Virus record (IMG/VR): IMGVR_UViG_3300008954_003475
Span: 62,001-126,000 of that record
Length of the DNA: 64,000 nucleotides
Reading direction: 5' to 3' (one strand)
How positions within the stretch are numbered: the stretch's first letter is position 1; every line of letters starts with the position of its first letter. Both the position numbers and the translations under genes were made by a program. The notes under the pieces were generated by a model. The model made no database searches. It saw only the letters and a list, made by a program, of their open reading frames with translations, and was not told the DNA's origin. This document shows, one piece after another, positions 11,364 through 61,286 of the stretch.

Positions 11364-14300
11364 TTAACTTAATACGCTATTTGGTATGTCTATAATACCA
11401 ACTTCAATAACATTTATTTCACCTGTAAAATTAAACCCACTTATTTCATCTCTGAAGTCTAACCAGCTGTTTTGTTTGGGCCCGCCTTTTGGAAAAATAC
11501 CCAAGGCTTTATTGCTGCTGATATCTCCGGAAAGATCAGAAGTAAATACACCCAATAGCTTTCTATCCATGCATTTTATCTCACCAAGAGGATTCGTATC
11601 ATCCTCTCTTGTAAGATATGATATCTGCTCTATAATCTTTGTAGAATTTATCGGAGTTACTGGCATATTGTTTGGCAACTTCATAGATGTAAGCTCTTTT
11701 GTAGTACCCGTTGATCCGCCACCAAAAAGAGAACCAACACTTGTCATTGCCTGACTTATTCCATCCACAAGGTCATCGCCTCCAGAGTATGCATGATCTT
11801 GAGCTACTTGGCTCGGATTCTCCAAAAGAGATCTGACTATTGCCATCTTTTCGCTAACATTTTGAATCGCCTCTGTATCGTCTGGATCTTTTACGAATCC
11901 TCTAACTAAAACATATCTAGTTCCCATCATTGAGCCTGATAGGTCCATCATCATATTTGTAAATCTTATTTGATTATCTTTATAATCTAACAGCTCTGCC
12001 ATACCAGCGCCTCCAGTTGGAAATACAAGTGTCGAATCTGGCTTCAACACTCTGTAACTATCATCTGTTGATTCCGTTCTATACATCAGAGCAGGATCCT
12101 CAAGGAAGTTGGAAACAAGATCCTGTCCAATAATATCTAGCGGGCTTGGCAAATACTCTCCGGGAGGATGGCCGTAAATTAAAGAAAGGCTTGTCGTAAA
12201 ACTTTGTCCACTATATGAAAAGCTATGGTTAACAGATCTAACATAATAAAGCAATCCCTTTGCCGGAACATACACCGTATCTCCTGGCTGATAAAATTCA
12301 TTTCCAGGTACAGAAATTTCTCCTCTATTTATATTCATTTTTTGTAACAATAATTCTAATATCGCATATGGCCTCGCCTGCCCTTCGGCATCACTTATAA
12401 AAGGAACATTTATTGGACCACCTGACTTATAGCCATACTGTCTCCAAAGATCAAAGTCTGTTGCTCCAGCCCAAAAATACAAGCCATCTGTTCCAGAGTT
12501 TAAATTGGCCCCCATTCCTAGTGGCGCATCACCCTGCACATCCACTCGACAAAAGTCTGGTGGATTTTCTGTAAAGGTAGCAGATAGAATATATTCATCT
12601 TTCAATATATATCTCTTTCCTGATCCATATCCTAAAAAGTTTCTTGTATCATCTTCTATGAGATGATCAAAGACAGAACCCTCATTTGCATCTCCAGTTA
12701 TAATATCAATAGCATTTTGAGTGCTTTCTGCTAAATTCTCAAGAAACTCAACCCCATCTCCAGATATTATTCCATCTGCAACATCTATCTCATCAGAATC
12801 TTCGCCAGACTCAAGAATTCCCGAAATCTCCTCTAACTCTTCTTGTTTTGACAAGTTTGCTTGCAACATAGAAACATAACTATCTCTTTGAGATATAGCT
12901 TTTTTAATTTTATCCAAAATTCCATTGTTTCCTGTAACCACACTGTCAATATCTTCTTCATCCATAAAGAATATTAAATCTTTATTCTTAAAACCTTCTT
13001 TTTTGTCAATGCCTATGCCTTGAGCGGGATCTCTTCCGAATTGCTTCTTAAAAGTATTTCTTATGCCATTTAGGTTGTCAATTGTTGCCAGGTGTTGCGC
13101 TGGAGGCCTTATCGTATTGCCGGTGCCAGAACTGCCTGCTGCTGTCATTATATCGTTAACAATACCAGCCTCTTCTTGAAAGATTGGATCAAAAATACCC
13201 AAAAGAGTCTCTGTGTCTCCAGATAAAATATCTCCATTTTCCTGAAAAGCAGCCGTAACCTTTAGCCCATCTCCGAACAACGAATTATTACTCTCTGTTA
13301 TATCTCCAGCAGTTCCTTCAAACTCTCTCTGCTTAAGCTGCAAGCCTCCAGTTTGTGGAGAGTTGGCTCCAAAGAAATTTGCAATATCCCCAAACACTCC
13401 GCCGGCAACGGGGGCTTGAACTCCAAAGAAATCTAATGAATCTGGACCAGATAGCTGCATATTTGGAATTATCGTATGATCTGGATACCTTCCCATCATA
13501 AGGCATAATAATACAATCTTTACATTCAAAGTGTGTACCGATAAATATAATCCTTCAATTCTTGTTGAAAAAAGATTGGTTATAAACCCTGGCATAATAT
13601 CTCTGCCAGTTTCCTCCTGCGTTCTTATAACTTCCTTTAAAATAGAAAGGGGTGTTCGATTCCAAAGAGGAGGTCTAAACTCTAAATGACCCTGACTGTT
13701 GCAAAAGAATTCCAGGTGCAAATACCTAGCTGCCTCATCACATTTTTGATAAGTATCAACAAAGGTTCCTTTAAATAATGGAAAACTTCCATTATTTAAT
13801 GATAAAATAAATGGTTTAATATCAGCACTATCATACTGATCTGATACAACAAATAAATTCCTATCCCTATTCAGCCTAACATCTTCAATTCTTCTTTGCG
13901 CCCCAATCAGCCTCATTGCTCTATTTATATCATGATTTTCCTCTTCATCATCATCCAGCGGAAGGCCGGAGCTTGGACCAAACAAGCTTATTTCAATGCC
14001 AACATCGTCGGCCGAAGTTAATGCACTATTAAACTGAGTTCCAACCCTTATCTGTTCTTGAATCGCAGCATCAATTGTATCAATTTCAGCCTGCAATGTG
14101 GCAACCAAAGCGGCTGCCGGAATTCCCGTCTGAACCCCGCTTCCAGCGTTTTTTTGAAGACTTCTCATCTTCTTTCTAAGTTTCACCTTTCTCTTTTGCA
14201 AATTTTTAACCTGATTATTAGCCGTAGATCGAACCCCAGCCTGATTAATCATCTGTTCTGCCGCAGAAGAGCTAACTGACGCCATTCTATATGGGTGAAA

Positions 14301-16697
14301 ATTTCCATAATATTCATTTTGCTCTCTTACCGCCTCCACAACACCTGTTAGTGGATCTTCTGGGCTAAAGTTTGTAGAACGATCACTCTTATTGTGCGCC
14401 GCGAGAGATTGCTCTATAAATGTTTCTACATCATATGGCTGCCCAACAATCAAAATGCTTAAAATATTTGGAATATCAAGATTATTTAAAACATCATTTG
14501 TAGCTGTAACAGAATAATTTTGATCAAATTGTGAAGACATCTGGCTCTCTCCGGTTGGATCTACAATTTGAAATCCAGCCGTGGCCGTGATAACTCCGGT
14601 CTTCCACCTGTATACAAAACCATCCGGATGTTGCATTACCTTCTTTCCATCTAAAGAACCAGGTCCATTGTATTGGCTTTGAAGAAGATTTCCCTCTGTA
14701 GCGTTTTGTCCGGCTAATATCCCAGAATCATAGCTAAGCAAGCCTGATGATAATAAATTTTTATTTTCATACAGCAATTCTCTTTCAGAGCCTATAACCT
14801 GTCCTAATTCATCTTTCGCCAATTCAAACGGAGTCAGCGGATCTTCCAAGATTCCCTGAGGATCGGCCATCGCTGGTTTTATAGCAAACCTACTCCACTT
14901 TAGCCAAGACATATTATCTGTGCATGAAACATTCAAAGTCCAATAACCTCCTGAAAAATTTTCAGAAGTATTTGTAATATACCCTCCGAACACATGAATC
15001 ATTCCAAATGAATTATCCTGCATATGCCTTAATTTTTTATAAGTTTCAATATCCATTCTTTGATTTGTATATAATTGATACTCTGCCTTTAAAACTGCAG
15101 TGTCAATTTCCATAAAACCTGTATCAAAAGGTGCTTCGCTAGCCTCCTCTGGGTATAGTGACCCTCCTAATGTATAATCTGTATATGTTCTATTTCCACG
15201 AATATAAAAATGAACAGGATCTGGCGGACTCACAATTGGCTTTCCAAGATAAAAGGTTCTAAGCCTCTCTCTTACATATTCCATGTCTAAAGAAGAATCT
15301 GCAGACCCCGCGCCACCGAGCTCCATAGCGGCAGATACAATGGATGACCCATCTATCGGAGGCATACTTCCGGCCATACCCTCAGATTGCATTCCACCGT
15401 TTACTAATTCATCAAGAATTCCAACCGTTCCATTCAAAGCCTCTTCTATTGCAAGCTCTATATCATCCTCTAAAATGGTTCCAAGCCTATATGGATAAGT
15501 CATTGCGAAACTGGCAGTCCCAGGAGCAGTCTCATAGTTGGTTGAAGTTTGAAAACTATTAAAAATTGTAAGCTCAATGACCCCAGTTCCTGGCCCTATT
15601 ATATAATTGGCCGGATCGTGCGGATCAACTATCCATGTTGTTAATTGATTATCAGTAGAAAATGCATTCCTTTTAAGCACCTTTGCTATATCTTCATTCA
15701 TAGCACTATATTGCTCAACAGAAGATCCATAAGCAAAGGCATCCCCTATATCGCTAAACATGGTGTCCCAACTAAAGCTGAGATCTGCATCTGCATCTGC
15801 TCCACTTATAGCGGAAGCGTGACCATCTACACCTTCGTATTCATTTTTAAACTCTTCTTTTTTGCCTTCAAGAATCAACTTTGCAGTAGAGGCTGGCAGT
15901 GTATCTAAATAAGTTCTATTTGTATCTAAAGTAACACTCAAATAAGCTTCAATCTCTTCTCCTCTTTCATCAGTCAATAAGTTTCCATCCTCATCTCTAA
16001 GAAAAAGATCAGTAGTTGGCGCAGCGTCTGAACCTGGAGGGGCTACCGAAGATCTAGACTCAGCCAGTTGTTCATCACTTGCGTATATATACTGACCAGT
16101 GGCTGTATCATAGTATGCAGAGCCACCTTCGAGGCCCAAATTGTCCCCCCTAAGCTCAGAAAGCCACTCCTCAAGTCTTTTTGCAACATATTCTTCAGAA
16201 GTATATCCAAGTTTGTTTATATCGAATAAAGCTCCTTCGTTTATAAAAGAAGACAGCAAGTTCATACTGTACATCTTATTATCAGAAAGAAAATTTTCAA
16301 ACTTTGTTAAGCTCTCATATGCTCTTATCTGCTGAACTTTATAAGCAAACAATGCCTTAGTTGCTCTTAAAAGCATTTTTTCAGTTTTGTCCATAAACCT
16401 TAAATCATTAGCGCTTTTTAATGAAGAAAATGGCTTTTTCTTTATTAAAATTGTTGCCTCAGGAGACATCGCCAACAAGTTTCTGGTATCAGGAGTTACA
16501 GAGTTTGCATGATTTTGGTCTAAGAATATAGAAGCACCCGTGCCAACAAGCGAAGGCGGCGGGTTCTCTATAGATCCATAATCAACATGTATAGGGACTG
16601 CTCCCTGAGATATCTTTGTTCTTGCCTCATTCAAAACCTCTTTGATGCGAACATCCAACTCTGGAGTTAAACTCGGACTGGGCGCACTACCTGCCAT
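11364..16697 (-). CDS. Baseplate hub protein (gp27/gpD/Mu gp44-like), enlarged, 1777 aa
   Basis: C-terminal RGEISVPGNEFYQPGDTVYV..LLYYVRSVNHSFSY.GQSFTTSLSL is the typical hub fold end. Also FFCNSQGHLEFRPP. Lies between the tube initiator and the spike. Confidence 0.75.
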   Translation of the reverse strand: MAGSAPSPSLTPELDVRIKEVLNEARTKISQGAVPIHVDYGSIENPPPSLVGTGASIFLDQNHANSVTPDTRNLLAMSPEATILIKKKPFSSLKSANDLRFMDKTEKMLLRATKALFAYKVQQIRAYESLTKFENFLSDNKMYSMNLLSSFINEGALFDINKLGYTSEEYVAKRLEEWLSELRGDNLGLEGGSAYYDTATGQYIYASDEQLAESRSSVAPPGSDAAPTTDLFLRDEDGNLLTDERGEEIEAYLSVTLDTNRTYLDTLPASTAKLILEGKKEEFKNEYEGVDGHASAISGADADADLSFSWDTMFSDIGDAFAYGSSVEQYSAMNEDIAKVLKRNAFSTDNQLTTWIVDPHDPANYIIGPGTGVIELTIFNSFQTSTNYETAPGTASFAMTYPYRLGTILEDDIELAIEEALNGTVGILDELVNGGMQSEGMAGSMPPIDGSSIVSAAMELGGAGSADSSLDMEYVRERLRTFYLGKPIVSPPDPVHFYIRGNRTYTDYTLGGSLYPEEASEAPFDTGFMEIDTAVLKAEYQLYTNQRMDIETYKKLRHMQDNSFGMIHVFGGYITNTSENFSGGYWTLNVSCTDNMSWLKWSRFAIKPAMADPQGILEDPLTPFELAKDELGQVIGSERELLYENKNLLSSGLLSYDSGILAGQNATEGNLLQSQYNGPGSLDGKKVMQHPDGFVYRWKTGVITATAGFQIVDPTGESQMSSQFDQNYSVTATNDVLNNLDIPNILSILIVGQPYDVETFIEQSLAAHNKSDRSTNFSPEDPLTGVVEAVREQNEYYGNFHPYRMASVSSSAAEQMINQAGVRSTANNQVKNLQKRKVKLRKKMRSLQKNAGSGVQTGIPAAALVATLQAEIDTIDAAIQEQIRVGTQFNSALTSADDVGIEISLFGPSSGLPLDDDEEENHDINRAMRLIGAQRRIEDVRLNRDRNLFVVSDQYDSADIKPFILSLNNGSFPLFKGTFVDTYQKCDEAARYLHLEFFCNSQGHLEFRPPLWNRTPLSILKEVIRTQEETGRDIMPGFITNLFSTRIEGLYLSVHTLNVKIVLLCLMMGRYPDHTIIPNMQLSGPDSLDFFGVQAPVAGGVFGDIANFFGANSPQTGGLQLKQREFEGTAGDITESNNSLFGDGLKVTAAFQENGDILSGDTETLLGIFDPIFQEEAGIVNDIMTAAGSSGTGNTIRPPAQHLATIDNLNGIRNTFKKQFGRDPAQGIGIDKKEGFKNKDLIFFMDEEDIDSVVTGNNGILDKIKKAISQRDSYVSMLQANLSKQEELEEISGILESGEDSDEIDVADGIISGDGVEFLENLAESTQNAIDIITGDANEGSVFDHLIEDDTRNFLGYGSGKRYILKDEYILSATFTENPPDFCRVDVQGDAPLGMGANLNSGTDGLYFWAGATDFDLWRQYGYKSGGPINVPFISDAEGQARPYAILELLLQKMNINRGEISVPGNEFYQPGDTVYVPAKGLLYYVRSVNHSFSYSGQSFTTSLSLIYGHPPGEYLPSPLDIIGQDLVSNFLEDPALMYRTESTDDSYRVLKPDSTLVFPTGGAGMAELLDYKDNQIRFTNMMMDLSGSMMGTRYVLVRGFVKDPDDTEAIQNVSEKMAIVRSLLENPSQVAQDHAYSGGDDLVDGISQAMTSVGSLFGGGSTGTTKELTSMKLPNNMPVTPINSTKIIEQISYLTREDDTNPLGEIKCMDRKLLGVFTSDLSGDISSNKALGIFPKGGPKQNSWLDFRDEISGFNFTGEINVIEVGIIDIPNSVLS

Positions 16698-17740: not shown

Positions 17741-19813
17741 TTAGTCTGTACTCGCGCCCGCACGATTTCTAGTTCCCTGTCCAAGTTCATTACTTATTGT
17801 GGCTGCTGCATTTAATACCGATCCAGCCCTATCTGTCAAATCAATCTCTATAGAAAGCTTAGCAGCAAAAGCATCCGCTATTGCTACAGCCATGGCGTCT
17901 GCCAAGTCCCTCCTACTTGAAAACCCGGCCTGCTCCAAAGCCGATGTTGATGCCTCAGACGCCGCAAGCATAGATGCTCTCTCTATATTGGCAGGTAATT
18001 CATTCATATTTAAATTAAAATTATCAAGATTACCGCTCAAATTAGTAGCAGCCTCAACGATGCCGGCATTATCGGCCGGGCCCTCCATTGTCGCGGCTCG
18101 CGTTAACGTTCCAACATCCCCTCGGGTAGCGCGAGGAGCATTGGCCCCGCCTCCTGGTGCAGATAAAATTTGACTTATAGAGCTATCTCCCTCCAGGCCA
18201 AGACTGTCTAATGCGCTAAGCAGACTATCCTGAAGGCCGCCTGATCCGGCGGCTCCTATTCTTCCCCGAATAGCCTCTCCACCCGCCTGAATACCTCCCG
18301 TTAACTTTCTTCTGCCTGCCGCAGCCACGCCTCTCATTCCTTCCAAAGCCGGTCTTGCCAAAACTGCTAACAAATTAGATTGAATTGCAAGCTGTTGATT
18401 TGCCTTTTCCCATTCATCAAGGGTTTTATCTCTTCCTTCCATCTCATTCTTTAATTGTTTTTCTAATTCTGCCTTGGTATCCACATCTCCAGATCTAGTT
18501 GCATCATCTAATCTTGAAAGCATGTCCAAAACACGAGTTGCTGACTTATCATCACCAACTCCAAATTGATTTTTTAACATCTGCTGCTGTATATAAAACT
18601 GATTCTGAAGCTCTGGAGACTCAGCTGCCTGCTGAACAGTTACGATATCTCCCCCTGTAAACGAAGCAAGGGTATCTTTCATCCCCATTGCCAATTGAGC
18701 CCCTATATCTGATTGTTCTCCAGTCTGTTCAGCCTCCAGCATGGCCGCCTGCATTCCGATTGATGCTCCCAGCACTCCTGATCCGCCACCGCCGCCGATA
18801 TCTAATCCACCTCTTTGAAATACAAGATAAGCATTTGCATAATTCGTTGTTAAATCTGCCAATGCACTAGTCAAAGTCCGCGTTAAATCAACAGCATTTT
18901 CAATTCCAAGCCCCATATCTTGCATTGTTCGTCCAAACCCTTCTAATATTGGTCTTCCAAAATCTGCTGACATTCCAAGCTTTTCGAACCCTTGTACTGC
19001 GCTATTCAATGTAGACGCAACAGTTGATGCTCTTAATCCTGTTTCTTTTGCAACTGCACTAAATCCGCCGATCATCTCTGCAGCTTCTTGGGCGCTTTTT
19101 CCCTGCTTGTTCATAGCTGTATTGAAATATTCAGCACCCTCGGATACAGATACGCCCATGGCAGCAGCTTGAGCTGCAGCAACAGCATAGAGCTTTGTTG
19201 ACCCAATTCCCGTATCAACACTTTGATTTAACTGATCTAATGATAAGCTGGTATTTTTAGTCGCCTCAACAAACCCTGTCATGGCATCTTTTGTAAGATA
19301 CATAGATTGTGCAAATTGACTTGCCGTCTCTGTCCTTAAACCATCTGCAAATCTTTCTGCTTCGCCAATTGTGCTTCCAAACTGCTTTCCTAAGTCAAAA
19401 ATGCCTTTATCATATTCTCTTAACGCTCTGGAGGGCCCGTCAAAAGTTTCTGCCAATAACTTAGCAGATTCAACAGCACCTTCTCCAAGCTCGCCAAGAA
19501 TGCTCGTGCCAACCGACATGGCTTGAAACATAGCATTTGCCGCGCTACCAACCCCTGGAATTTTTGAAGCAAGAGTTCCAAGAAAGCTAAGAGATTTAGA
19601 GCCTGCGTCTGTCATGCCGCTGATTGCCTCTGCAGCCTCCTCAAAGGCTGGAGTCATACCGCCGACCTTACTGCCACCAACTGACGAGCCAAGTTCAAAA
19701 ATACTCTTTACAGAACTATTAAACCCCTCTGTAGTATCCTTGGCCTCTTTCGCAGCCTTACGGTACGCCTCGACCTCAGCACGGAGCTGTGCAACCTCAT
19801 CTTGAACGGACAT
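17741..19813 (-). CDS. Tape measure protein (690 aa)
   Basis: Ala/Gly/Ser-rich helical sequence in the canonical position after the tail chaperones and before the tube initiator. Confidence 0.75.
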   Translation of the reverse strand: MSVQDEVAQLRAEVEAYRKAAKEAKDTTEGFNSSVKSIFELGSSVGGSKVGGMTPAFEEAAEAISGMTDAGSKSLSFLGTLASKIPGVGSAANAMFQAMSVGTSILGELGEGAVESAKLLAETFDGPSRALREYDKGIFDLGKQFGSTIGEAERFADGLRTETASQFAQSMYLTKDAMTGFVEATKNTSLSLDQLNQSVDTGIGSTKLYAVAAAQAAAMGVSVSEGAEYFNTAMNKQGKSAQEAAEMIGGFSAVAKETGLRASTVASTLNSAVQGFEKLGMSADFGRPILEGFGRTMQDMGLGIENAVDLTRTLTSALADLTTNYANAYLVFQRGGLDIGGGGGSGVLGASIGMQAAMLEAEQTGEQSDIGAQLAMGMKDTLASFTGGDIVTVQQAAESPELQNQFYIQQQMLKNQFGVGDDKSATRVLDMLSRLDDATRSGDVDTKAELEKQLKNEMEGRDKTLDEWEKANQQLAIQSNLLAVLARPALEGMRGVAAAGRRKLTGGIQAGGEAIRGRIGAAGSGGLQDSLLSALDSLGLEGDSSISQILSAPGGGANAPRATRGDVGTLTRAATMEGPADNAGIVEAATNLSGNLDNFNLNMNELPANIERASMLAASEASTSALEQAGFSSRRDLADAMAVAIADAFAAKLSIEIDLTDRAGSVLNAAATISNELGQGTRNRAGASTD

Positions 19814-19819
19814 TTTGCT

Positions 19820-20757
19820 TTATTTATCCTTTGTTATATTAAATAATCTAGACATATCTTTCGGCATCCTCGTACTCCTAGCGTCTCTAGGCTTGTCTCC
19901 AGTATTACCTTGTAAATTAGTATTTTTATACTTACCCCGAATAGACTTAACCAATTCATCATTCTTTCTAAATTCTTCTTGAAGTATTTGTCTTTCGAAT
20001 TCTTCATCTGAAGCAAATCTGTCATCATCCTTAGAATCTCTAATATTTCTAATTTTTTGCACAGCTTCAGAATTCCAGAACGAAGCCAAATATTCAGCAA
20101 GATCTAGATTATATTCATATTTGTTTTTTTCATCTTCTTGCAACATTTGGGCGTACCAAAGCCATTGAGCTTCGCTGATATTCTCGAAACGCTCATCGTC
20201 AGAAGTGCAACTCCATGTCTTGCATAGAGCCCAGCGGAGCCTGCTGATTGGCTCCTCGGTTATACTTTTAAATCTTCTAAACCAATCTCTTCACTAGAGG
20301 CTGCTACAAGCTTTTCGTATATTTGATATACTCTTTCAACAACAACTGACTGCATGTTAAGAACAACATCCAACCTTCTCTCTGCAACGCCCTCTAACTC
20401 TTCATTTGCACAAAGATCTTCTAAAGGAACTCCATTTACCGACTCAATAACATAAGAAACAGTAACAGGCTTTATGTCTAGCAATCTATCTATCTGATCA
20501 AATTGCATCACTGTTTGCATAATTTCCTTTTGCTGCTTTGTAGATAATGTGGTTATAACAAATTTATATCCAACTATATCCACAACCTCATTTATCTTTC
20601 CTAAAAAAATTAAATTTTTCAAATCATCTAGACCGAGCATTGTTTCATTTGTTTCTTCTTTACGATTGTCGTCTACAACGGGCTCGATCTCTTCTAAGCT
20701 ATCTTCTTCATTACTTGTATCATTAGAACGACTAATCGTGGCGGTTCTCTTTGGCAT
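19820..20757 (-). CDS. Tail assembly chaperone GT-like fusion made by -1 ribosomal frameshift (~312 aa)
   Basis: Slippery T TTA AAA at 20266-20272. The -1 frame is open from there (KSITEEPISRLRWALCKTW...QWLWYAQ) straight into the 19820..20146 ORF (MLQEDEK...). Confidence 0.8.
20260..20757 (-). CDS. Tail assembly chaperone G-like (165 aa)
   Basis: Acidic small protein between tube and tape measure genes, GGAG SD, ends LEDLKV* over the slippery site. Confidence 0.8.
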   Translation of the reverse strand: MPKRTATISRSNDTSNEEDSLEEIEPVVDDNRKEETNETMLGLDDLKNLIFLGKINEVVDIVGYKFVITTLSTKQQKEIMQTVMQFDQIDRLLDIKPVTVSYVIESVNGVPLEDLCANEELEGVAERRLDVVLNMQSVVVERVYQIYEKLVAASSEEIGLEDLKV

Positions 20758-20872: not shown

Positions 20873-21508
20873 TCAACTATAAGCTGCCGAAATAAGACCC
20901 GGGAAGTCCAAGGGACCTCTGCGGTCGCCCATATCCGCAGCCTGCTCAACTGCATCCACATCGATCTTGGAGGCATCGACCTCTCTGCTGCCACCCACGC
21001 CTTGGCTGTTTGCAACCGGCTCGTGTGCTCGCTTGGAAGATATGAATTCACAATCAATACCAGCAGATTCTGCAATAGTATAATCAGAAGTTTGATAAGT
21101 CTTTGATAAATTATTGAACCAGCAATTATGATAAGTCGTTATAACCGCATCATCACCGTCTCCTGTAAACTTATCAATAACCACTATATCAAACGGCATT
21201 CTTTGAGCATGAATATTCTTAAAGCCTCTGGCAAAAGATTCAGGCAAAGATAAGCCATCAAATACAATTCTGTTAACCTGCAAAGAGAACTTTGCCGGAG
21301 ACTGAGGAACTAACTCTATTATGCCATCAGTTCCAACTTCCGAAATAGGCTTGTTAGATCTTGACTGAGTTTCTTGAAAAGACTGGATCGCGCCGACTGG
21401 CTCGCCATTGACATAAACAATAACCTGCGTTGATAGACCGGTTCTAGTCTTTGCGCCTGTAATTGTAGCGCTATCAAATAAAGTTGATGTATTTGGATAA
21501 TCTGCCAT
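20873..21508 (-). CDS. Tail tube protein
   Basis: VYVNGEPVGAIQSFQETQSRSNKPISEVGTDGIIELVP...FSLQVNRIVF...PFDI...TYHNCWF is a myovirus tube pattern. Directly after the sheath gene. Confidence 0.88.
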   Translation of the reverse strand: MADYPNTSTLFDSATITGAKTRTGLSTQVIVYVNGEPVGAIQSFQETQSRSNKPISEVGTDGIIELVPQSPAKFSLQVNRIVFDGLSLPESFARGFKNIHAQRMPFDIVVIDKFTGDGDDAVITTYHNCWFNNLSKTYQTSDYTIAESAGIDCEFISSKRAHEPVANSQGVGGSREVDASKIDVDAVEQAADMGDRRGPLDFPGLISAAYS

Positions 21509-21520
21509 TATTTTCTCCTA

Positions 21521-24500
21521 TTATATGACCCCAACTTCTATATCTATAAAGATGTAATTTATAGGATAAGCTGGAGAGAACTGTAAAAATACGTTAATCT
21601 GTCTTGGGTCAACCTTATCTTGTTCAACCCTAACATTCTTATACTGAGTGACCAACCCTTGAGCAATTAGTGCCGACATAATCGAACTAACCCTAGCTCC
21701 AACAAGGTTGTTTGTATCTCCGCTTTGTACTCCGCCTATAAATCCCTTAAGAGAGTTTCTCAAAACTCGTTTAACGGTGTCTCTAATGAAGATAATAGAG
21801 ATTTCTTCATCCTCAACAAATCCTGATTGACTTGTTGTTCTGCCTGCCAAAACCTTTCCGCCTCCGGTTACTGGCTCAACAACTGTTGCGCCGACGTTAC
21901 CAAGGCCATTTAAAATGACAGGTCTAAAAATCTTGTCTCTGGTTAATGCAAATCCAGATAATGTCTTGTATGTTAACGGAAGAGCTACATTCTGTCTTGC
22001 CGATAGCCACCCAGAAGCTGCTGCGGCCATATAAAACCCGTGTAGATTAACATTTGTTCCATTTACATTTCTAACAATCGTATCTGGGAACATATAAACA
22101 CATCTGTTGCTCGTATAGTTATCACTTAGCTTGAAGTTTACAAGGTCTTCCACATTATCATCAAGAACCTCTTCTGGATCATCTCCCTGAATTCCTTCAA
22201 GAATTCCGATATCTTCGACCGCAACCTCTTCTGTTCCGATTAAAGCAGCGGCTGAAACCCCCATTTGCGCTCCGATAAATGCCACCCTCTCCATCCTGTT
22301 TGCAACAGAACTCATGTTCTCACAGTGATTAACTGTTGCTCTAAAGATTGAAGAAATAGCCTGAGTTGGAAGAGGTACGATGATTTGAGCATCCGCAGCC
22401 TCAAGCGCCTCAAGCGCGTTAAACCAATTTGTATCAAAATAATCTGAATCATTTTCGTCTACATAAGAAATCTTAAGACCATCACCATCCTGAAGAACGC
22501 CGCTAGTTACAAGATCTTCATGAAGAAGAAGACAAGCATCATCAGGGGTGCTAGAAGGATCCTTGATGAAGAAGTTAATATCTTCATATTCAGCCGCAAG
22601 AGTTATAGCCTCACCATCGCTGGCCCTCACAACATATGCTTTTGAATCATCTGTTACTGCGCTTATTGTAAGCTCGACCTCATCAACTCCATCATTATCC
22701 AGCCCCAGCGCTCCAGAAACCTGCTCTTTACTTGTTAAAGCCGTTCTGCTATCCCAAGCTTCTCCGGCATTTTCCATGCTTGTAACGACAATTGTCATCC
22801 CAACATGTTCTCCGTCAAAATCAAATTCTGGAGTTGTGAAGTAAAATCCATCATCATCTTCGGCAATTTCGCCTTCGATTCCATTTCCAACAATGTCCTC
22901 ATCTATATTTACAACCGTATATGAGAAAGCATTATCAGAACTTCCTATCCAATTATATTGCTGGATATCTGATTCAAGCTGAGAGTTATAAAAGTCTACT
23001 TTATTCGGGAAAACCTGTGTTTCTTCGCCATCTCTTACAATAAAAATGTTAACCCTAGAGTCTGCATCAGGTCGGCCATTTCTAAGGCCTGTAATTGGTC
23101 TTGAGATAACGAACCTAAGATCATCTACTTCGCAACCAGATCCACAATCTGGAAATCCACCGACTCCCAAAGAATCTCTTTCTTCTAATAGAGTTGCGGT
23201 TGTTCTTCTTGGGATTGCAGGCTTGCATTGAAGCGCAAGAATTGCTGGCGCCCCATTCTCCATGGCCATCTGTGACCCAAGAGAAAGAGTGTTGTCTTCG
23301 CTTGGGTTTCCGTGCTTCGTAAATAATGAATTAGCACCTGTAAAAAACTCTGGATCATTAAGATCACCTTCGAAAACATATTTTGCCTCTAAGTTATCGC
23401 CCAAAGCTAAAGCTCTTGAGTTTACATCAATATAGAACTTATCCCCCACCTCGAATGGAACCGCACCCTCTTCTATTCCTAATAGTAAAATTCCATTATT
23501 TTCTAACATATGGAATGTAAGGCCTGTGTCTGATAAACCACCGGTACCCTCTAAGTCTGGAAGGCCTGTACTTTCATCGTCAAGAGCATGAAGTCTAAGC
23601 CTTCTGGTTGAAGTAATTGCGCTAACAGTATACCTGCCTCCATTGGAGTTCGTTCCTGCGCACATCACCACAGTCTTTCCTACATCGCCGCTTGTAAAGC
23701 TGCCCTCAGTAGTTGGCGCTCCAGTTGTAGTATTGTGAAGAACATCCTCATCATCTATCAACAGGTTTGTCGCCCGGATCTCCCAATCCATATCAGTCCA
23801 ATCGGCGGGGCCAAGACTGTCTGTAGTAAGAGTTATTGTTGTGTCTGTTCCATCATATTCTAAATCTTCTATTTCATATCCTGCATAACCATCTATGCAT
23901 AAAAAGTCTCCCGCCATGGCCTGACCCTGAGTAACAATATCGGCACCAGCAACAACAAAAGTATCAGTCGTAGATTCTGTTTCATCCCCACTCTTTAGAG
24001 TTGCAGAGCCCTGGGGGAATGCAAGTCCGGAGACATCTCCGTAAGCTACAACAAACCCATCTGTGCATTCGTCTGAAGTTCCAGAGATTGCTCCATCTCC
24101 ACTGGTGTAATATGAACTGTGAAAGGCCATCGGGCTTCCTGCGGAATCATAAATCTGTCCAGATTCAGACCCTGTAACGCTAAACGTGGCCAGCCCAGGA
24201 ATGGGATCGCCATTTGAATCTCTTACGACACTTACGCATCTTACGGTCCACCTCTCTGCCGGAGCAGAGTCATCAAGTACATCCAGGGTAATAAACGGAT
24301 CACAACTTGCATCTTCAATGATTGTTCCCGTTCCTATATTCATACTTGCTGCAGAATATCCCTTTCCGTCCTGATCGCCAATAGAGGCTCCCTGCAGCTC
24401 AATGCATCCTGTTGCAGGATCTAATCTAAAGTCAAAGGCTGAATCAAAACCATTTGCATCAATCTCATCTTCCTTTCCAAAAAGAAGAGTTCCGTTTAAT

Positions 24501-24763
24501 CGAAGCTCTGTTCTTCCGCTAACGACAGGAATGTTTTGAAGCTCAAAAAAGCGCCCATCACCGCTACCGGTGGGGCTGCAATCTGCCGCTCCATCCTCTC
24601 CGCCGCCTGCTGCGGCCTGAACAATGGTCTCCTCCCTGAGGCCTTCGCCCATAACACAAACTATTCTTATTCCGCCTGGGATAGAGACCCCACGGGAAAG
24701 AACCCTATCTCTTGCAAATGCTCCAGGCTGAATGAAACCTGAAATGCCGGGTATATTAGCCAT
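21521..24763 (-). CDS. Contractile tail sheath protein (1080 aa, with insertions)
   Basis: N-terminal PGAFARD..S. C-terminal sheath core (ERVAFIG...LTYKTLSGF...GRTTSQSG..EDEEISIIFIRD...VEQDKVDPRQINVFLQFSPAYPINYIFIDIEV). Confidence 0.92.
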   Translation of the reverse strand: MANIPGISGFIQPGAFARDRVLSRGVSIPGGIRIVCVMGEGLREETIVQAAAGGGEDGAADCSPTGSGDGRFFELQNIPVVSGRTELRLNGTLLFGKEDEIDANGFDSAFDFRLDPATGCIELQGASIGDQDGKGYSAASMNIGTGTIIEDASCDPFITLDVLDDSAPAERWTVRCVSVVRDSNGDPIPGLATFSVTGSESGQIYDSAGSPMAFHSSYYTSGDGAISGTSDECTDGFVVAYGDVSGLAFPQGSATLKSGDETESTTDTFVVAGADIVTQGQAMAGDFLCIDGYAGYEIEDLEYDGTDTTITLTTDSLGPADWTDMDWEIRATNLLIDDEDVLHNTTTGAPTTEGSFTSGDVGKTVVMCAGTNSNGGRYTVSAITSTRRLRLHALDDESTGLPDLEGTGGLSDTGLTFHMLENNGILLLGIEEGAVPFEVGDKFYIDVNSRALALGDNLEAKYVFEGDLNDPEFFTGANSLFTKHGNPSEDNTLSLGSQMAMENGAPAILALQCKPAIPRRTTATLLEERDSLGVGGFPDCGSGCEVDDLRFVISRPITGLRNGRPDADSRVNIFIVRDGEETQVFPNKVDFYNSQLESDIQQYNWIGSSDNAFSYTVVNIDEDIVGNGIEGEIAEDDDGFYFTTPEFDFDGEHVGMTIVVTSMENAGEAWDSRTALTSKEQVSGALGLDNDGVDEVELTISAVTDDSKAYVVRASDGEAITLAAEYEDINFFIKDPSSTPDDACLLLHEDLVTSGVLQDGDGLKISYVDENDSDYFDTNWFNALEALEAADAQIIVPLPTQAISSIFRATVNHCENMSSVANRMERVAFIGAQMGVSAAALIGTEEVAVEDIGILEGIQGDDPEEVLDDNVEDLVNFKLSDNYTSNRCVYMFPDTIVRNVNGTNVNLHGFYMAAAASGWLSARQNVALPLTYKTLSGFALTRDKIFRPVILNGLGNVGATVVEPVTGGGKVLAGRTTSQSGFVEDEEISIIFIRDTVKRVLRNSLKGFIGGVQSGDTNNLVGARVSSIMSALIAQGLVTQYKNVRVEQDKVDPRQINVFLQFSPAYPINYIFIDIEVGVI

Positions 24764-26470: not shown

Positions 26471-29400
26471 CTAGTAATCATCATCTGATACGTTATTCGC
26501 CTCTACGTACCCATAGAATGTAGAGTTGTTCAGTCCAGACTCAGCCCCAATACCATAAGGGCCAGTCGTTTGGTCTGTTACATTTATTGAAATGTTTCCA
26601 TTTATAATAACATTATTAACGTAGCTGCCGCCATCCCAATAAATAGCCCCGTCGCCCCAGCCTATAGAATCAAAAAAACAATCTTTTACAATCAAATTGC
26701 CGAAATATAGCCCAGAACCACGGCCCTGCCTAACAGCCCACTCCCATGGCTCAGCGTCATTTACACTAGTCCGTGTTCCATTGTCAATTCCTATACAATT
26801 TATTTTAGAAAGCCTAAAAGTAGCCTCTGGAGAGCTGGTTGAGCTTCCAGTGCTAGATATTTCTTGAGCTACTTCAACAATAGAGCCTCGGTCTGTAAAG
26901 GATTCATGCTGTTTATATGTAAAACTTTCAAGCGTTACTCCATAAACTATATCCTCAGAAGAAGATCTGTTTCCGGGCTCTCCTCCTCCTATATAAATTA
27001 ACACACTTTGATCAGCAGAACTTCCACCGACCAGCAGCTCTCCGCTTCGCTGTATTATAGTGTTTGGCCCAGCGCCGCTAAGTATCAAGTCAAAATCAAT
27101 AATAATTGTTTCAGAAACATTATATGTCCCTTCTTTTAGAAAAATATTTGGGGTTCCCATTTTTGGAAATAATTTTGAAAACATTCTCGCATAATCTACG
27201 GCAGCCTTAATATCTGTAAAGTGTCCAAACCTTTGATCATTGGCAACCGTTATATCACCAATAAGCTTATGGTCAATATGATCTATAAACAATCTAAGAT
27301 CTGTTACCGTTGTTGTCTCCCCAGAAGTATCTACTTCCACATAAGCAAGATTTGCTACGGCCTGACCCGCAAATGGCGACACATACTCTGCACCAGCACC
27401 TGCTCGATCAACCTCGTTTTCAACAATAATACATCCACTTCCATCCAAAGCTATATAAAAATTATCTGTATCATTATAATCCTCAACACCCCCATCGTAT
27501 TTGTAAACAAGATCTGTAACTCCCAAGTATTCAAACCTTACACCGTTTACTACTGCAACTCCTGGGTTTATAGTTATCTTGCATGTACTGCTATCCACAT
27601 ATGTAATGCTATCTATATCTGTAGCTCGAATTACTCCGCTTGTTCTTAATTCATTTCTTGGACCCTGTATGTATCTTTCAAGAAATGCTTCTCCAATGAT
27701 TGTATCATCAACAGTTCCTGTGATTCTTTTGTTCCTTACAGTCGGAACTGCTCCACCGGTTTCAGATGCAGATCCTAAAATAAATCCAAAATCAGCCGAA
27801 TAAACCCCTCTGCACAAATGCAACACGCTACTTGGAAGATCATCATAGCCTATTAACACCGATGTCTGTTCTGAAAGTGGCGGGCCTGATGCTAAAACCT
27901 CCAAAACTATATACGACATCTTATCTCTGGAAAAAACCTTATATTCTCCGGTTGCACCCACAAAGGTCTCCTCCCCCTCACTCCCCGGCGTCACATCATA
28001 AGGGGGCGTTGTAGACTCTCCAACCGTGGTTCCCAAATAAGCCATACCATCGGTTGTTACTGTTACAACATAAATATCATCCGCTTGAATAAAGCCTCCT
28101 GACACATCTGAAACAATGGCATAAAATCCGGCTGTTTCAATATGCCTTACAGTGTCTAGTTTCTTTTTATAAAAAATATCTTTATTTTGATCAACGAATA
28201 CATCAAACATAATAAGACCATCGGTCTCAAGAAACTCCATCTCTCCGATTGGGGCTGTACACCTTATTACAAAAACTGAAGAATCATCCGAAATCTCCCC
28301 TTGTAATGCTGGAGTTCCAGATGTAGGATCCAATATTATTGTATTTGCAGATACATTACGAATTCTGAAAGTACCATCGTCTCCAGATTCTGTAGAGCCG
28401 TCAATTACACATAAATCACCAGTTCTAATATCATCTGCTATAAAGTCTGTAGATACAGAGCTCAAATACATTGTTCCTGCAGCAATAAGTATAGAGTCAT
28501 CTCCATACTTCTTTATCTTTCCAAAATCTTCTAAAAGTCTTCCATTAATATGATAAGCGTTTCCCCCAGAGCCTTCAACCTCTCTGTCCAAAAGATATGA
28601 TAGCCCCAAGACTTCTGCCGCATCAGTTGTTGCTGCGACCAATTTGATTGTTCTGTTTTTAGAATCTTCTGCAAAGCTTGGCAAAACGTGCGTAATTGCC
28701 AACTCATAACATCTTAATGATCTTATCTTATATGCAAAAATGTTTAAGTTATTAGCTACAGCATAATCATTTATTTTAAAAACAATTGTATCAAGATTTT
28801 GAATATCAAAGTCTTCATCATAAACTGTTATCTCAACTGTATCTCCTCCGTCTATTTCCAAGGCAATCATATCAGCCACGCCATCTTCAAGACTCGTTGG
28901 CTTTATTCCGGACGATATAATTGTTGCTGCATTCGGAAGGGCCACTTGAACATCTGGCGTATTAGATTTATCGTATCTAGGTCTAACGCTACAGTTTAAT
29001 CCATTCTCATTATAATTTACAAATTGATTTTTAGTTATCTTAGCCGTCGTTCCTTCTTCAATCTCATTTACTGGACCGCCAAATATCATTACATAATCTA
29101 CATCACCTTCGTCGGTCAATGCTACAGATGCAATTAAATATTCTGTATTATCTTCTTCAAACGAAGAATCTACAACGGAAAGTATATCAAAAGGCTTTGG
29201 GGCGGTCGTTGGTGTTGGCGGGGTTGAAAAAGATACTTTAGATGTGCTTTTATCATTTGGACCATCATAAATTATTTCGCTGGCCTCTGTCAGCAGCGTG
29301 CCTATCTCATTCCCCTCCCAGGCATTATAGGAAGAACCCGTTCTTATTATTCCATTCGAATTGAAGTTAAGATTTGAATTTCTGAGCCCCTCTCCTTCCA

Positions 29401-30094
29401 ATTCTGCTAAATCATCAATGGCTCCTTGAACACTTGATGAGCTAATTAAATCTGAAGTTTCTTCATTGCTATAATATATCTGTCCCGCAATATGAGAATT
29501 ATTATTTGCGCCTATACTTTCACCGGTATAGTTCATATGAGCATTATAAATTTCTTCCAAAATCTCCTGAAGAGTTCCCTCTCCAAGAGCCATCGTTGCA
29601 TCGGAAGACTCCTCAGCCTCCGCTGCTTCTACGGCTATTGCTTTGGCATAATGTCTATTTATAGCATCATCATGAACGTGTGCCGAAACAATCGCATTAA
29701 GCTCTTCAAGGGTTATAATAAACGCATCTAATCTGTTGTCCAAAATAGAAATTTGATCTTGCAGCAAATGAGTTGGAAAGTTTAATCGTAATTTGCTTTC
29801 ATTAATTGCCGCGACTTTTGATACGTCTGTATCTGTAACAGGGCCTGAAAGAACATTCGATCTATCCAAAGCTTCTTTTAATATATTTCCATTTTCATCC
29901 AAAGCATTTGACAGCCTTGCCGAAACGGTATTTCCGGTTGCTCCTTGCGGATTTATACCCAGAGCCTTTTCAATATTAAATATTGCAGACCTAAGACTAT
30001 TAAACACATCAGAGCCTATCTCGGTAATATTATCTCTAATTACCGGGATCTCTACTGATGTATCTAATTCATTTGGATATTTTGATTTTGGCAC
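26471..30094 (-). CDS. Tailspike/tail fibre paralogue 2 (1207 aa, C-terminal pectate-lyase-like beta-helix)
   Basis: GTG start with GAGG SD. N-terminus near-identical to 30104..36016 (MPKSKYPNELDTS.EIP). HFTDIKAAVD...NIFLKEGTYNVSETIII...LSGAGPNTII is a beta-helix entry motif. Confidence 0.75.
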   Translation of the reverse strand: MPKSKYPNELDTSVEIPVIRDNITEIGSDVFNSLRSAIFNIEKALGINPQGATGNTVSARLSNALDENGNILKEALDRSNVLSGPVTDTDVSKVAAINESKLRLNFPTHLLQDQISILDNRLDAFIITLEELNAIVSAHVHDDAINRHYAKAIAVEAAEAEESSDATMALGEGTLQEILEEIYNAHMNYTGESIGANNNSHIAGQIYYSNEETSDLISSSSVQGAIDDLAELEGEGLRNSNLNFNSNGIIRTGSSYNAWEGNEIGTLLTEASEIIYDGPNDKSTSKVSFSTPPTPTTAPKPFDILSVVDSSFEEDNTEYLIASVALTDEGDVDYVMIFGGPVNEIEEGTTAKITKNQFVNYNENGLNCSVRPRYDKSNTPDVQVALPNAATIISSGIKPTSLEDGVADMIALEIDGGDTVEITVYDEDFDIQNLDTIVFKINDYAVANNLNIFAYKIRSLRCYELAITHVLPSFAEDSKNRTIKLVAATTDAAEVLGLSYLLDREVEGSGGNAYHINGRLLEDFGKIKKYGDDSILIAAGTMYLSSVSTDFIADDIRTGDLCVIDGSTESGDDGTFRIRNVSANTIILDPTSGTPALQGEISDDSSVFVIRCTAPIGEMEFLETDGLIMFDVFVDQNKDIFYKKKLDTVRHIETAGFYAIVSDVSGGFIQADDIYVVTVTTDGMAYLGTTVGESTTPPYDVTPGSEGEETFVGATGEYKVFSRDKMSYIVLEVLASGPPLSEQTSVLIGYDDLPSSVLHLCRGVYSADFGFILGSASETGGAVPTVRNKRITGTVDDTIIGEAFLERYIQGPRNELRTSGVIRATDIDSITYVDSSTCKITINPGVAVVNGVRFEYLGVTDLVYKYDGGVEDYNDTDNFYIALDGSGCIIVENEVDRAGAGAEYVSPFAGQAVANLAYVEVDTSGETTTVTDLRLFIDHIDHKLIGDITVANDQRFGHFTDIKAAVDYARMFSKLFPKMGTPNIFLKEGTYNVSETIIIDFDLILSGAGPNTIIQRSGELLVGGSSADQSVLIYIGGGEPGNRSSSEDIVYGVTLESFTYKQHESFTDRGSIVEVAQEISSTGSSTSSPEATFRLSKINCIGIDNGTRTSVNDAEPWEWAVRQGRGSGLYFGNLIVKDCFFDSIGWGDGAIYWDGGSYVNNVIINGNISINVTDQTTGPYGIGAESGLNNSTFYGYVEANNVSDDDY

Positions 30095-61190: not shown

Positions 61191-61286
61191 AGCAAACCCT
61201 TCTAGACTAATAAACCGGTACAAACATTTATATAAATATTAGTTTTTAAACTTTTTGTGTAATTTTTTTTTGAATTACATAGTTTT

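What the first reader, a model, noticed from the sequence alone, without database searches (positions are those of the whole stretch)
20227..20272. Programmed -1 frameshift site T TTA AAA with a switchable downstream hairpin in the tail chaperone
Seen: the G-like ORF ends GAT TTA AAA GTA TAA, an X XXY YYZ heptamer (20266-20272). The -1 frame gives 40 extra sense codons (SITEEPISRLRWALCKTWSCTSDDERFENISEAQWLWYAQ) running into the 108-aa ORF, for a ~312-aa fusion. Ten nt downstream lies GGAGCC-AATCAGCA-GGCTCC (6-bp stem). A mutually exclusive fold, GAGCC..CAGC/GCTG.GGCTC, is also possible. Known: lambda G/GT-type frameshifts occur upstream of tape measure genes. The heptamer here resembles the coronavirus U UUA AAC type rather than lambda's G GGA AAG. 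The true T product is the fusion, not the 108-aa ORF.
Basis: partly seen in the sequence, partly recalled or inferred. Interest (0 to 1): 0.6.

Follow-up and report, generated by a model that had tools for sequence, protein, structure and literature searches.

The report
Tail chaperone -1 frameshift site
A large uncultured phage makes a second, longer form of its tail assembly chaperone by letting ribosomes slip back one base at T TTA AAA in front of a conserved RNA hairpin; this is a well-known phage strategy and the case is well supported but ordinary.

Summary
On the minus strand a 165-aa ORF (20757..20260) ends GAT TTA AAA GTA TAA. The -1 frame runs on for 148 codons, giving a 312-aa fusion, and a 6-bp stem follows. 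The ORF is a tail assembly chaperone by family hits and by fold (HK97 chaperone 2OB9, Bacillus phage G gp181). It lies between a sheath and tube gene and a probable tape measure gene.

About 47 distinct homologous loci show the same layout. The -1 frame stays open 141-150 codons in every complete locus. Protein conservation starts at the slip site, and the ATG of the 108-aa ORF is not conserved.

The site is either T_TTA_AAA, always preceded by T whatever the amino acid, or A_AAA_AAA/C one codon downstream with no such constraint. The type changed at least three times on the tree.

A stable stem-loop directly 3' of the site is kept across the family. Mean 36-nt folding energy is -13 kcal/mol there against about -3.5 elsewhere. 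It is more stable than synonymous recodings in all 47 sequences.

The "switchable" alternative fold is not supported: it is negligible in the ensemble and not conserved. Verdict: a new member of the lambda G/GT kind. No frameshift product has been measured.

The parts
20260..20757 (-). G-like tail assembly chaperone ORF, 165 aa, 0 frame
   Evidence: Translation. Of 27 homologues, 18 hit phrog_2992 and 16 hit phrog_2792, both 'tail assembly chaperone'. AF2 core pLDDT is about 85. Foldseek top PDB hit is the HK97 tail assembly chaperone 2OB9 (prob 0.99, E 0.064, above the tool's 0.001 mark). BFVD hits are Rhodococcus phage Finch TAC (4e-7) and Bacillus phage G gp181 (TMt 0.79).
20266..20272 (-). 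Slippery heptamer T_TTA_AAA (Leu163-Lys164 in the 0 frame)
   Evidence: Sequence. L163 and K164 are invariant in 27 homologues. In the 26 loci with T_TTA_AAA alone, the preceding codon always ends in T (GAT, CTT, TTT, GCT, GTT, AAT) and the Leu codon is always TTA. In several loci a -1-frame stop lies directly 5' of TTT.
20260..20262 (-). 0-frame stop TAA of G, one codon after the heptamer
   Evidence: A stop 1-2 codons after the site is found in all loci.
20231..20259 (-). 3' stem-loop, the putative frameshift stimulator. Core stem is 20255..20250 with 20241..20236 and an 8-nt loop; outer CCG/UGG pairs start 6 nt after the heptamer.
   Evidence: Fold. Family-wide MFE spike at this position. 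More stable than synonymous recodings in 47 of 47 sequences, mean z -2.5. Pair counts.
19820..20266 (-). T segment: 148 codons in the -1 frame plus stop, expressed only as the C-terminal part of the 312-aa G-T fusion
   Evidence: Translation. The -1 frame is open 141-150 codons in every complete locus. Residues C20, D23, D24, Q34, W37 and Y38, all upstream of the ATG, are invariant. The third-position entropy pattern fits the -1 frame. BLASTP to the -1 part of phage G gp182 gives E 1e-7.
19820..20146 (-). The 108-aa ATG-started ORF: not an independent gene, but the distal part of T
   Evidence: Met41 is replaced by S, T, N, V, A or F in homologues. I see no SD-like sequence upstream of the ATG. 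The best-conserved T residues lie upstream of it.
20210..20230 (-). Second hairpin (8 bp, loop CAAGA) directly after the first; seen mainly in the nearest relatives
   Evidence: WIN, L008, L009, L053; L061 has a looser version. Not conserved in the wider family.
17741..19813 (-). 690-aa ORF in the tape measure position
   Evidence: Position and size only. No PHROG or Pfam hit and no significant similarity to the phage G tape measure. The Atlas feature search gives a lead to PF20155 TMP_3 (score 0.94), with low-TM structure rows for PF10145.
20873..21508 (-). 211-aa tail tube protein, directly upstream of G
   Evidence: phrog_985 at 3e-12. AF2 model (mean pLDDT 62) matches tail tubes of phage 812, diffocin, phiCD508, Mu and Hcp, with E down to 1.8e-6. 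An ORF of similar size lies just upstream of G in 31 of the 39 loci screened, and 29 of them align with the window's protein.
21521..24763 (-). 1080-aa tail sheath protein
   Evidence: phrog_2839 at 2.4e-16 and phrog_279 at 5.9e-13 on the C-terminal part.

Best explanation
This is the G/GT-type programmed -1 ribosomal frameshift of the tail assembly chaperone of a contractile-tailed jumbo phage (virus record of about 222 kb).

Most ribosomes translate the 165-aa chaperone and stop at TAA. A minority slip back one base when tRNA-Leu sits on UUA in the P site and tRNA-Lys on AAA in the A site. The two tRNAs re-pair with UUU and AAA. Translation then continues in the -1 frame for 148 codons and gives a 312-aa G-T fusion.

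A stem-loop starting 6 nt after the heptamer (6-bp G+C-rich core plus outer pairs) resists unwinding at the mRNA entrance. It presumably raises the slip rate.

By analogy with lambda gpG/gpGT, the G parts coat the tape measure protein, and the T part recruits the tube protein so that tube polymerisation starts on the tape measure.

Shown here:
- the anatomy of the site;
- chaperone identity of G;
- gene order;
- family-wide conservation of the -1 ORF, of a slippery heptamer in phase, and of the hairpin beyond coding constraint.

Inferred, not shown:
- that slipping really occurs, and how often;
- that the hairpin stimulates it;
- what the T part binds.
For: 1. Identity and context. The order is sheath, tube, G, T, then a 690-aa ORF. 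G is a tail assembly chaperone by family hits and by fold.
2. The nearest annotated relative, Bacillus phage G gp181/gp182, is annotated as a joined (frameshifted) tail assembly chaperone just before its tape measure gene. Its site is A_AAA_AAC. Its -1 product aligns with ours from the first residues after the slip.
3. In about 60 fetched loci (about 47 distinct) the -1 frame is open 141-150 codons past the G stop in every complete locus. The +1 frame closes within 20 codons.
4. The T alignment is conserved from the slip onward. Invariant residues lie upstream of the ATG of the 108-aa ORF, and that Met is not conserved. Column entropy by -1-frame codon position is 0.79, 0.68 and 1.34.
5. Site covariation. 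The 26 loci with T_TTA_AAA alone all have T before TTA, although the residue there varies (D, L, F, A, V, N). Two further loci carry both heptamers. The 19 loci with A_AAA_AAA/C alone have free bases there (1 of 19 has T) and use CTA, TTA, GTA or ATA. The site type changed at least 3 times on well-supported branches.
6. In several loci a -1-frame stop directly precedes the heptamer. The shift is then confined to about 4 codons.
7. Hairpin. The mean 36-nt MFE over 45 loci is about -3.5 kcal/mol along the genes and -13 directly after the site. Native sequences fold better than amino-acid-preserving recodings in 47 of 47 cases, with mean z -2.5. Distant members keep a stem with quite different letters, for example L042, L043 and L070.
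Against: - There is no direct evidence of a frameshift product: no proteomics, no reporter, no cultured host.
- U_UUA_AAA is not among the most efficient heptamers in E. coli (PMC4066793). A low rate is, however, what G:GT systems need.
- In the window alone the hairpin is not significantly more stable than shuffles (z -1.55).
- RNAalifold found no single consensus structure because the stem register differs among distant members.
- The homologues are related, so the counts are not independent.
- The tape measure identity of the 690-aa ORF rests on position and a weak lead.
- The T part has no family hit.
Confidence: 0.88

Rival explanations
1. The 108-aa ORF is an independent gene started at ATG 20146. 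The heptamer and the open -1 stretch upstream of it are chance.
For: An ATG-started ORF of 108 aa exists. TTTAAAA is common in this A+T-rich window: 46 copies against 33 expected.
Against: The 40 codons upstream of the ATG are the best-conserved part of the T alignment (invariant C20, D23, D24, Q34, W37, Y38). Their codon-position entropy fits the -1 frame. Met41 is replaced by S, T, N, V, A or F in homologues. I see no SD-like sequence before the ATG, whereas G and the 690-aa ORF have one. The heptamer is conserved in phase in all loci.
Confidence: 0.02
2. The frame change is made by RNA polymerase slippage (an extra A in the mRNA) rather than by the ribosome.
For: Relatives with the second site type carry runs of 7-8 A, where transcriptional slippage is known to occur (own knowledge; discussed in PMC4066793). 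One inserted A would give the same fusion.
Against: The window has only A4 preceded by T3, too short for efficient transcriptional slippage (own knowledge). The strict T before TTA in 26 of 26 loci with that heptamer alone is what P-site tRNA re-pairing requires, and RNA polymerase slippage would not need it. A conserved structure 3' of the site fits a ribosomal mechanism.
Confidence: 0.04
3. The frameshift is real, but the stem-loop is a by-product of the conserved peptide (E-E-P-I-S-R-L-R-W) and does not stimulate slipping.
For: The stem arms lie in conserved codons. With a fixed register only 73% of cells pair, against 68% in shuffles. Phage G shows no significant hairpin (z -0.17). To my knowledge the lambda G/GT site needs no strong 3' structure.
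Against: Native sequences beat amino-acid-preserving recodings in 47 of 47 cases, and 74% have z below -1.64. The stability spike is unique along about 660 nt of the two genes. Members whose peptide differs (L042/L043: I-E-G-P-E-S-K/R-I-L-W; L070) still have strong stems from other letters.
Confidence: 0.1
4. One reading: two mutually exclusive folds form a switch that tunes the frameshift rate.
For: In the window the alternative fold alone is as stable as the 6-bp core alone (-12.1 against -11.9 kcal/mol). Its inner 4-bp helix pairs in 79% of cells.
Against: With the outer pairs and the second hairpin the main fold reaches -23.8 kcal/mol. Ensemble probability is 0.9997 for the main stem and about 1e-6 for the alternative. 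The three middle pairs of the alternative's outer helix are unpaired in 25-36 of 47 sequences. Its energy is below zero in 18 of 46 sequences (median +1.65) and it beats the main core in 5 of 46. The inner helix lies in Ser, Arg and Trp codons.
Confidence: 0.04

Closest known systems
Bacteriophage lambda gpG/gpGT and the conserved tail assembly chaperone frameshift of tailed phages (Levin 1993; Xu, Hendrix and Duda 2004, as cited in PMC5009743)
   Same: Two overlapping ORFs lie between the major tail (tube) gene and the tape measure gene. A -1 slip occurs on an X_XXY_YYZ heptamer a few codons before the G stop. T has no start of its own and is made only as a G-T fusion.
   Different: The heptamer is T_TTA_AAA rather than G_GGA_AAG. 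A conserved 3' stem-loop is present here. The phage has a contractile tail and a jumbo genome. There is no detectable sequence similarity to lambda G. The rate and the G:GT ratio are unknown.
Bacillus phage G gp181/gp182 (annotated tail assembly chaperone with a joined CDS, JN638751)
   Same: This is the nearest annotated relative. tblastn gives 26% identity, and the fold match has TMt 0.79. The slip lies at the same place in the protein. The -1 product starts with the same motifs (S-R-I/L-R-W, A-Q-W-L-W). A tape measure gene follows.
   Different: The site is A_AAA_AAC, one codon downstream. The T part is 252 aa against 148. There is no significant 3' hairpin (z -0.17). The host is a soil Bacillus. 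The tape measure proteins are not similar.
HK97 tail assembly chaperone, PDB 2OB9
   Same: Best solved-structure match of the G model (Foldseek prob 0.99, TM 0.62 by target).
   Different: E 0.064, 16% identity, rmsd 5 A. G here also has an extra disordered acidic N-terminal region of about 45 residues.
Bacterial -1 frameshift signals of IS3/IS911 elements and dnaX (heptamer plus 3' hairpin or pseudoknot, sometimes an upstream SD)
   Same: A slippery heptamer is followed after about 6 nt by a stable stem-loop. The relatives' A_AAA_AAA is a common IS motif (PMC4066793). Some homologues carry an SD-like AAGGAGGT upstream.
   Different: Different genes and products. The window's own upstream SD-like match is weak (-2.9 kcal/mol). 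U_UUA_AAA is not among the 16 heptamers that paper lists for IS1/IS3 elements.
Coronavirus U_UUA_AAC frameshift signal
   Same: The first six letters of the heptamer are the same, and the shift is -1 by tandem slippage.
   Different: The coronavirus stimulator is a pseudoknot read by eukaryotic ribosomes. Here a plain stem-loop is the only structure modelled and no pseudoknot-capable fold was run. There is no evolutionary link; the resemblance is of letters only.

Membership tests
Tail assembly chaperone G/GT with programmed frameshift | G protein belongs to the tail assembly chaperone families by sequence or fold | tested here: met
   The window protein alone is weak (phrog_2792 at E 0.004). 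At family level, 18 of 27 homologues hit phrog_2992 and 16 of 27 hit phrog_2792. Fold matches are HK97 TAC 2OB9, phage Finch TAC and phage G gp181.
Tail assembly chaperone G/GT with programmed frameshift | The gene pair lies between the major tail/tube gene and the tape measure gene | tested here: inconclusive
   The upstream side is met: sheath and a tube-fold protein directly precede G, and a tube-sized ORF lies upstream of G in 31 of 39 loci screened. The downstream 690-aa ORF has the right place and size but no family hit, and only an Atlas lead to tape measure families.
Tail assembly chaperone G/GT with programmed frameshift | A slippery sequence in the 0-frame phase lies within the short overlap of the two frames, near the end of G | tested here: met
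   T_TTA_AAA lies two codons before the stop and is the only X_XXY_YYZ in the overlap of about 9 codons. It is conserved, or replaced by A_AAA_AAA/C, in all loci.
Tail assembly chaperone G/GT with programmed frameshift | The second ORF has no translation start of its own and is conserved as protein from the shift site onward | tested here: met
   Met41 is not conserved, invariant residues lie upstream of it, and codon-phase entropy fits the -1 frame.
Tail assembly chaperone G/GT with programmed frameshift | Both G and G-T are made, at a low and fixed ratio, and both are needed for tail assembly | not testable with these tools
   This needs a reporter assay, proteomics or genetics in a host. 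None is known for this uncultured phage.
Tail assembly chaperone G/GT with programmed frameshift | The T domain binds the major tail/tube protein and G binds the tape measure protein | not testable with these tools
This step is inferred from lambda (PMC5009743).
Canonical tandem-slippage -1 PRF signal (X_XXY_YYZ plus 3' structure) | The heptamer allows both the P-site and the A-site tRNA to re-pair in the -1 frame | tested here: met
   UUA to UUU and AAA to AAA. The T at the first heptamer position is kept in 26 of 26 loci with that heptamer alone, across six different preceding codons.
Canonical tandem-slippage -1 PRF signal (X_XXY_YYZ plus 3' structure) | A stable RNA structure starts about 5-9 nt after the heptamer and is conserved beyond coding constraint | tested here: met
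   The spacer is 6 nt to the outer pairs and 10 nt to the core. Supporting tests are the family-wide stability spike and the synonymous-recoding test. In relatives with A_AAA_AAA the spacer is 3-8 nt.
Coronavirus-type signal (U_UUA_AAC plus pseudoknot) | An H-type pseudoknot acts as the stimulator | not tested
   No pseudoknot-capable fold was run. The only loop-to-downstream pairing seen (20246..20243 with 20235..20232) would leave a zero-length linker across a 6-bp stem. I judge that sterically implausible (inference).

The most novel reading that the evidence does not exclude
In this family of marine jumbo phages the slip site has moved back and forth by one codon at least three times, between A_AAA_AAA/C and U_UUA_AAA, in front of one conserved hairpin. 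The heptamer type and the spacer length (about 3-8 against 6-10 nt) may then be used as an evolutionary dial for the G:GT ratio. In the window's own small clade the extra alternative pairing and the second hairpin could add a conditional layer (for example temperature or translation rate) to that dial.
Probability: 0.07. Interest if true: 0.55.

Novelty: new member of a known kind. Interest (0 to 1): 0.3.

Why it matters
For annotation, the 108-aa ORF should not be called as a separate gene. The product is a 312-aa G-T fusion joined at 20266, and the same correction applies to dozens of related uncultured jumbo phage contigs.

For frameshift biology the family is a clean natural data set. It has two alternative heptamers one codon apart, repeated switches between them, and one conserved stem-loop with compensatory variation. 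That could be used to test how heptamer identity and spacer length set low-level frameshift rates in bacteria.

It does not change the known picture of tail assembly chaperone frameshifting.

Tried and rejected
- DNA search of the region against GenBank phages found nothing. The first IMG/VR scan returned only identical copies.
- RNAalifold on the 47-sequence alignment gave no consensus structure, because the stem register and letters differ among distant members. I replaced it with a named-structure count, a sliding-window MFE and a synonymous-recoding test.
- A profile search of G against PDB sequences gave only chance hits to designed repeat proteins.
- PHROG and Pfam scans of the T part and of the 690-aa ORF gave nothing usable.
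- BLASTP of the 690-aa ORF against the phage G tape measure was not significant.
- Complex prediction of the tube protein with the T part gave no verdict. It is not evidence either way.
- Literature searches for TTTAAAA or U_UUA_AAA as a phage chaperone slip site found no relevant report. This does not show that none exists, because Xu et al. 2004 is not in the searchable library.
- No tRNA and no Rfam family was found in the window.
- I considered a pseudoknot between the hairpin loop and the 4 nt after the stem and set it aside on steric grounds.
- The reads tools were not used.

Full report
**1. What is in the sequence**

The genes in this region lie on the minus strand. A 165-aa ORF runs 20757..20260 and ends GAT TTA AAA GTA TAA. 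The heptamer T_TTA_AAA occupies 20272..20266 in the X_XXY_YYZ phase.

It then passes through the ATG at 20146 and stops at 19822..19820. That is 148 codons, so a slip yields a 312-aa fusion.

The -1 frame opens only 8-9 codons before the slip. T_TTA_AAA is the only X_XXY_YYZ site in that overlap.

Ten nt after the heptamer lies the stem GGAGCC/GGCTCC (20255..20250 with 20241..20236, 8-nt loop). RNAfold adds three outer pairs, so the structure starts 6 nt after the heptamer. It also predicts a second 8-bp hairpin at 20230..20210.

Taken alone, neither element exceeds chance. TTTAAAA occurs 46 times in the window against 33 expected. The local fold has z = -1.55.

**2. What the genes are**

The window is part of a 221,878-bp linear virus record, about 66% complete by CheckV. 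It is also held in IMG/VR as a 223-kb contig.

The gene order upstream to downstream is:
- a 1080-aa sheath protein (phrog_2839 at 2e-16);
- a 211-aa protein with a tail tube/Hcp fold (phage 812, diffocin, Mu and Hcp matches, E down to 1.8e-6);
- the 165-aa ORF;
- the -1 ORF;
- a 690-aa ORF in the tape measure position.

The 690-aa ORF has no family hit. It is not similar to the phage G tape measure. The only lead is an Atlas match to tape measure families.

The 165-aa protein alone gives a weak chaperone hit (E 0.004). Its family is clearer: 18 of 27 homologues hit phrog_2992 and 16 hit phrog_2792, both annotated as tail assembly chaperone. An AlphaFold model (core pLDDT about 85) matches the HK97 tail assembly chaperone 2OB9 best among solved structures (prob 0.99, but E 0.064, above the tool's 0.001 mark). 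Among viral models it matches chaperones of phage Finch and Bacillus phage G (E 4e-7 and 5e-7).

**3. The nearest annotated relative**

Bacillus phage G gp181/gp182 is annotated as a tail assembly chaperone with a joined CDS, just before its tape measure gene. Its G stop is preceded by TTA AAA AAC, which gives the heptamer A_AAA_AAC one codon downstream of ours.

Its -1 product starts with the same motifs as ours: S-R-I-R-W and A-Q-W-L-W. BLASTP of the two -1 products gives E 1e-7.

**4. Comparative test of the frameshift**

A word search found 27 protein homologues at 37-82% identity. All end ...L-K-x(-x)-stop, with L163 and K164 invariant. Scans of viral and metagenome contigs returned about 60 loci, about 47 of them distinct.

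In every complete locus the -1 frame stays open 141-150 codons beyond the G stop. The +1 frame closes within 20 codons.

The -1 product is conserved from the first residue after the slip. The consensus begins I-T-x-E-P-x-S-R-L-R-W-x-L-C-K-x-W-x-C-x-V-D-D ... Q-W-x-W-Y-A-Q-M. The invariant residues C20, D23, D24, Q34, W37 and Y38 all lie upstream of the ATG of the 108-aa ORF.

That Met is replaced by S, T, N, V, A or F in other members. Column entropy downstream of the stop is 0.79, 0.68 and 1.34 for -1-frame codon positions 1, 2 and 3. So the 108-aa ORF is not an independent gene.

**5. The slippery site covaries**

Two site types occupy the same place.

| Site type | Loci | Codon before xTA | xTA codon |
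|---|---|---|---|
| A: NNT TTA AAA NNN stop (T_TTA_AAA) | 26 | always ends in T: GAT, CTT, TTT, GCT, GTT, AAT | always TTA |
| B: NNN NTA AAA AAA/AAC stop (A_AAA_AAA/C) | 19 | ends in T once in 19 | CTA, TTA, GTA or ATA |
| Both heptamers | 2 | GAT | TTA |

In type A the amino acid before TTA varies, but the T is kept. This is the pattern expected if the P-site tRNA must re-pair in the -1 frame.

On a maximum-likelihood tree of G+T proteins, type B is basal. Type A appears in at least three places: the window's clade, L027/L037, and L066. Well-supported branches force at least 3 changes.

In several loci a -1-frame stop lies directly 5' of the heptamer. The shift is then confined to about 4 codons.

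In E. coli, V_VVA_AAR heptamers (which include A_AAA_AAA) and U_UUA_AAG are the efficient classes. U_UUA_AAA is not listed among them (PMC4066793). A modest rate is what a G:GT system is thought to need; lambda runs at about 30:1 (PMC5009743).

**6. The hairpin is conserved**

The mean MFE of a 36-nt window, averaged over 45 loci, is about -3.5 kcal/mol along 660 nt of the two genes. It drops to -13 kcal/mol for windows starting 0-6 nt after the conserved TAAAA.

Recoding the 13 following codons with synonymous codons (same -1-frame peptide, locus codon usage) gives less stable folds in all 47 sequences. The mean z is -2.5, and 74% have z below -1.64.

With one fixed register (alignment columns 18-25 with 34-41), 73% of cells pair against 68% in shuffles, and 6 of 8 pairs show double changes. 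Distant members keep strong stems built from other letters and registers, such as L042, L043 and L070. This is why RNAalifold found no single consensus. Phage G itself has no significant stem.

In type A loci the stem usually starts at column 16, which leaves a 6-nt spacer. In type B loci the spacer is 3-8 nt.

**7. The 'switch' is not supported**

The alternative fold exists on paper in the window: -12.1 kcal/mol against -11.9 for the core alone. In context the main fold, with its outer pairs and the second hairpin, reaches -23.8 kcal/mol. Ensemble probabilities are 0.9997 for the main stem and about 1e-6 for the alternative.

Across the family, the three middle pairs of the alternative's outer helix are unpaired in 25-36 of 47 sequences. 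Its energy is below zero in 18 of 46 sequences, with a median of +1.65 kcal/mol.

Its inner 4-bp helix pairs in 79% of cells, but it lies in conserved Ser, Arg and Trp codons. As a pseudoknot it would leave a zero-length linker, which I judge implausible.

**8. Mechanism and status**

The best explanation is lambda G/GT-type tandem -1 slippage on U_UUA_AAA, probably stimulated by the 3' stem-loop. It yields a minor 312-aa G-T fusion beside the major 165-aa chaperone.

The roles of G (binding the tape measure) and of T (recruiting the tube protein) are inferred from lambda. They are not shown here. An interface prediction for T with the tube protein gave no verdict and counts neither way.

Transcriptional slippage is unlikely in the window, which has only A4. 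It cannot be excluded as a contributor in relatives with A7-8 runs.

**9. Novelty**

This is a new, well-supported member of a known kind. The family-level picture is a tidy natural experiment: two heptamers one codon apart, repeated switches between them, and one conserved hairpin. It is not a new principle. Interest is 0.3.

Noticed in passing
window 583..8799, 30104..36016, 11364..16697, 26471..30094, 57771..61223 (all minus strand): Very large ORFs of 2738, 1970, 1777, 1207 and 1150 aa surround the tail module. This fits a jumbo phage with giant virion or baseplate proteins. None was analysed.
   Followed up: no
window 21521..24763 (-): The sheath protein is unusually long at 1080 aa. Only its C-terminal 180-350 residues match sheath families, so the first 700 or so residues are unexplained insertions or extra domains.
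   Followed up: no
homologous loci such as L025, L056, L063; window 20283..20292 (-): Many homologues carry an SD-like AAGGAGGT about 11-16 nt upstream of the slip site. Mean anti-SD duplex energy is -4.4 kcal/mol there against a background of -0.84. It could be a second, upstream stimulator as in dnaX and IS911. In the window itself the match is weak (-2.9), and the letters encode conserved K/E-E-I/V-G.
   Followed up: partly
window 20210..20230 (-): A second 8-bp hairpin directly follows the first. It is present mainly in the nearest relatives (L008, L009, L053; L061 has a looser version).
   Followed up: partly
L059 (LWDU01028084.1), -1 ORF: This locus has a T part cut short at 124 codons by a premature stop, while the family's C-terminal motif follows in another frame. 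It is probably an assembly error or a real indel in that contig.
   Followed up: no
P0026 (195 aa, JGI): One database homologue has an unrelated 90-residue N-terminus fused to the C-terminal half of the chaperone. It is probably a miscalled gene or a chimeric contig.
   Followed up: no
window 20757..20620 (-), G residues 1-45: The chaperone has a disordered, acidic N-terminal extension (pLDDT below 50) that the phage G gp181 and HK97 chaperones lack. Its start, M-P-K/R-R-T-A, is conserved in the family.
   Followed up: no
P0012, source name: One homologue is filed in NCBI under a Flammeovirgaceae metagenome-assembled genome. That may hint at a Bacteroidota host or may be a binning artefact. 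The window's genes use clear AGGAG-type ribosome binding sites.
   Followed up: no
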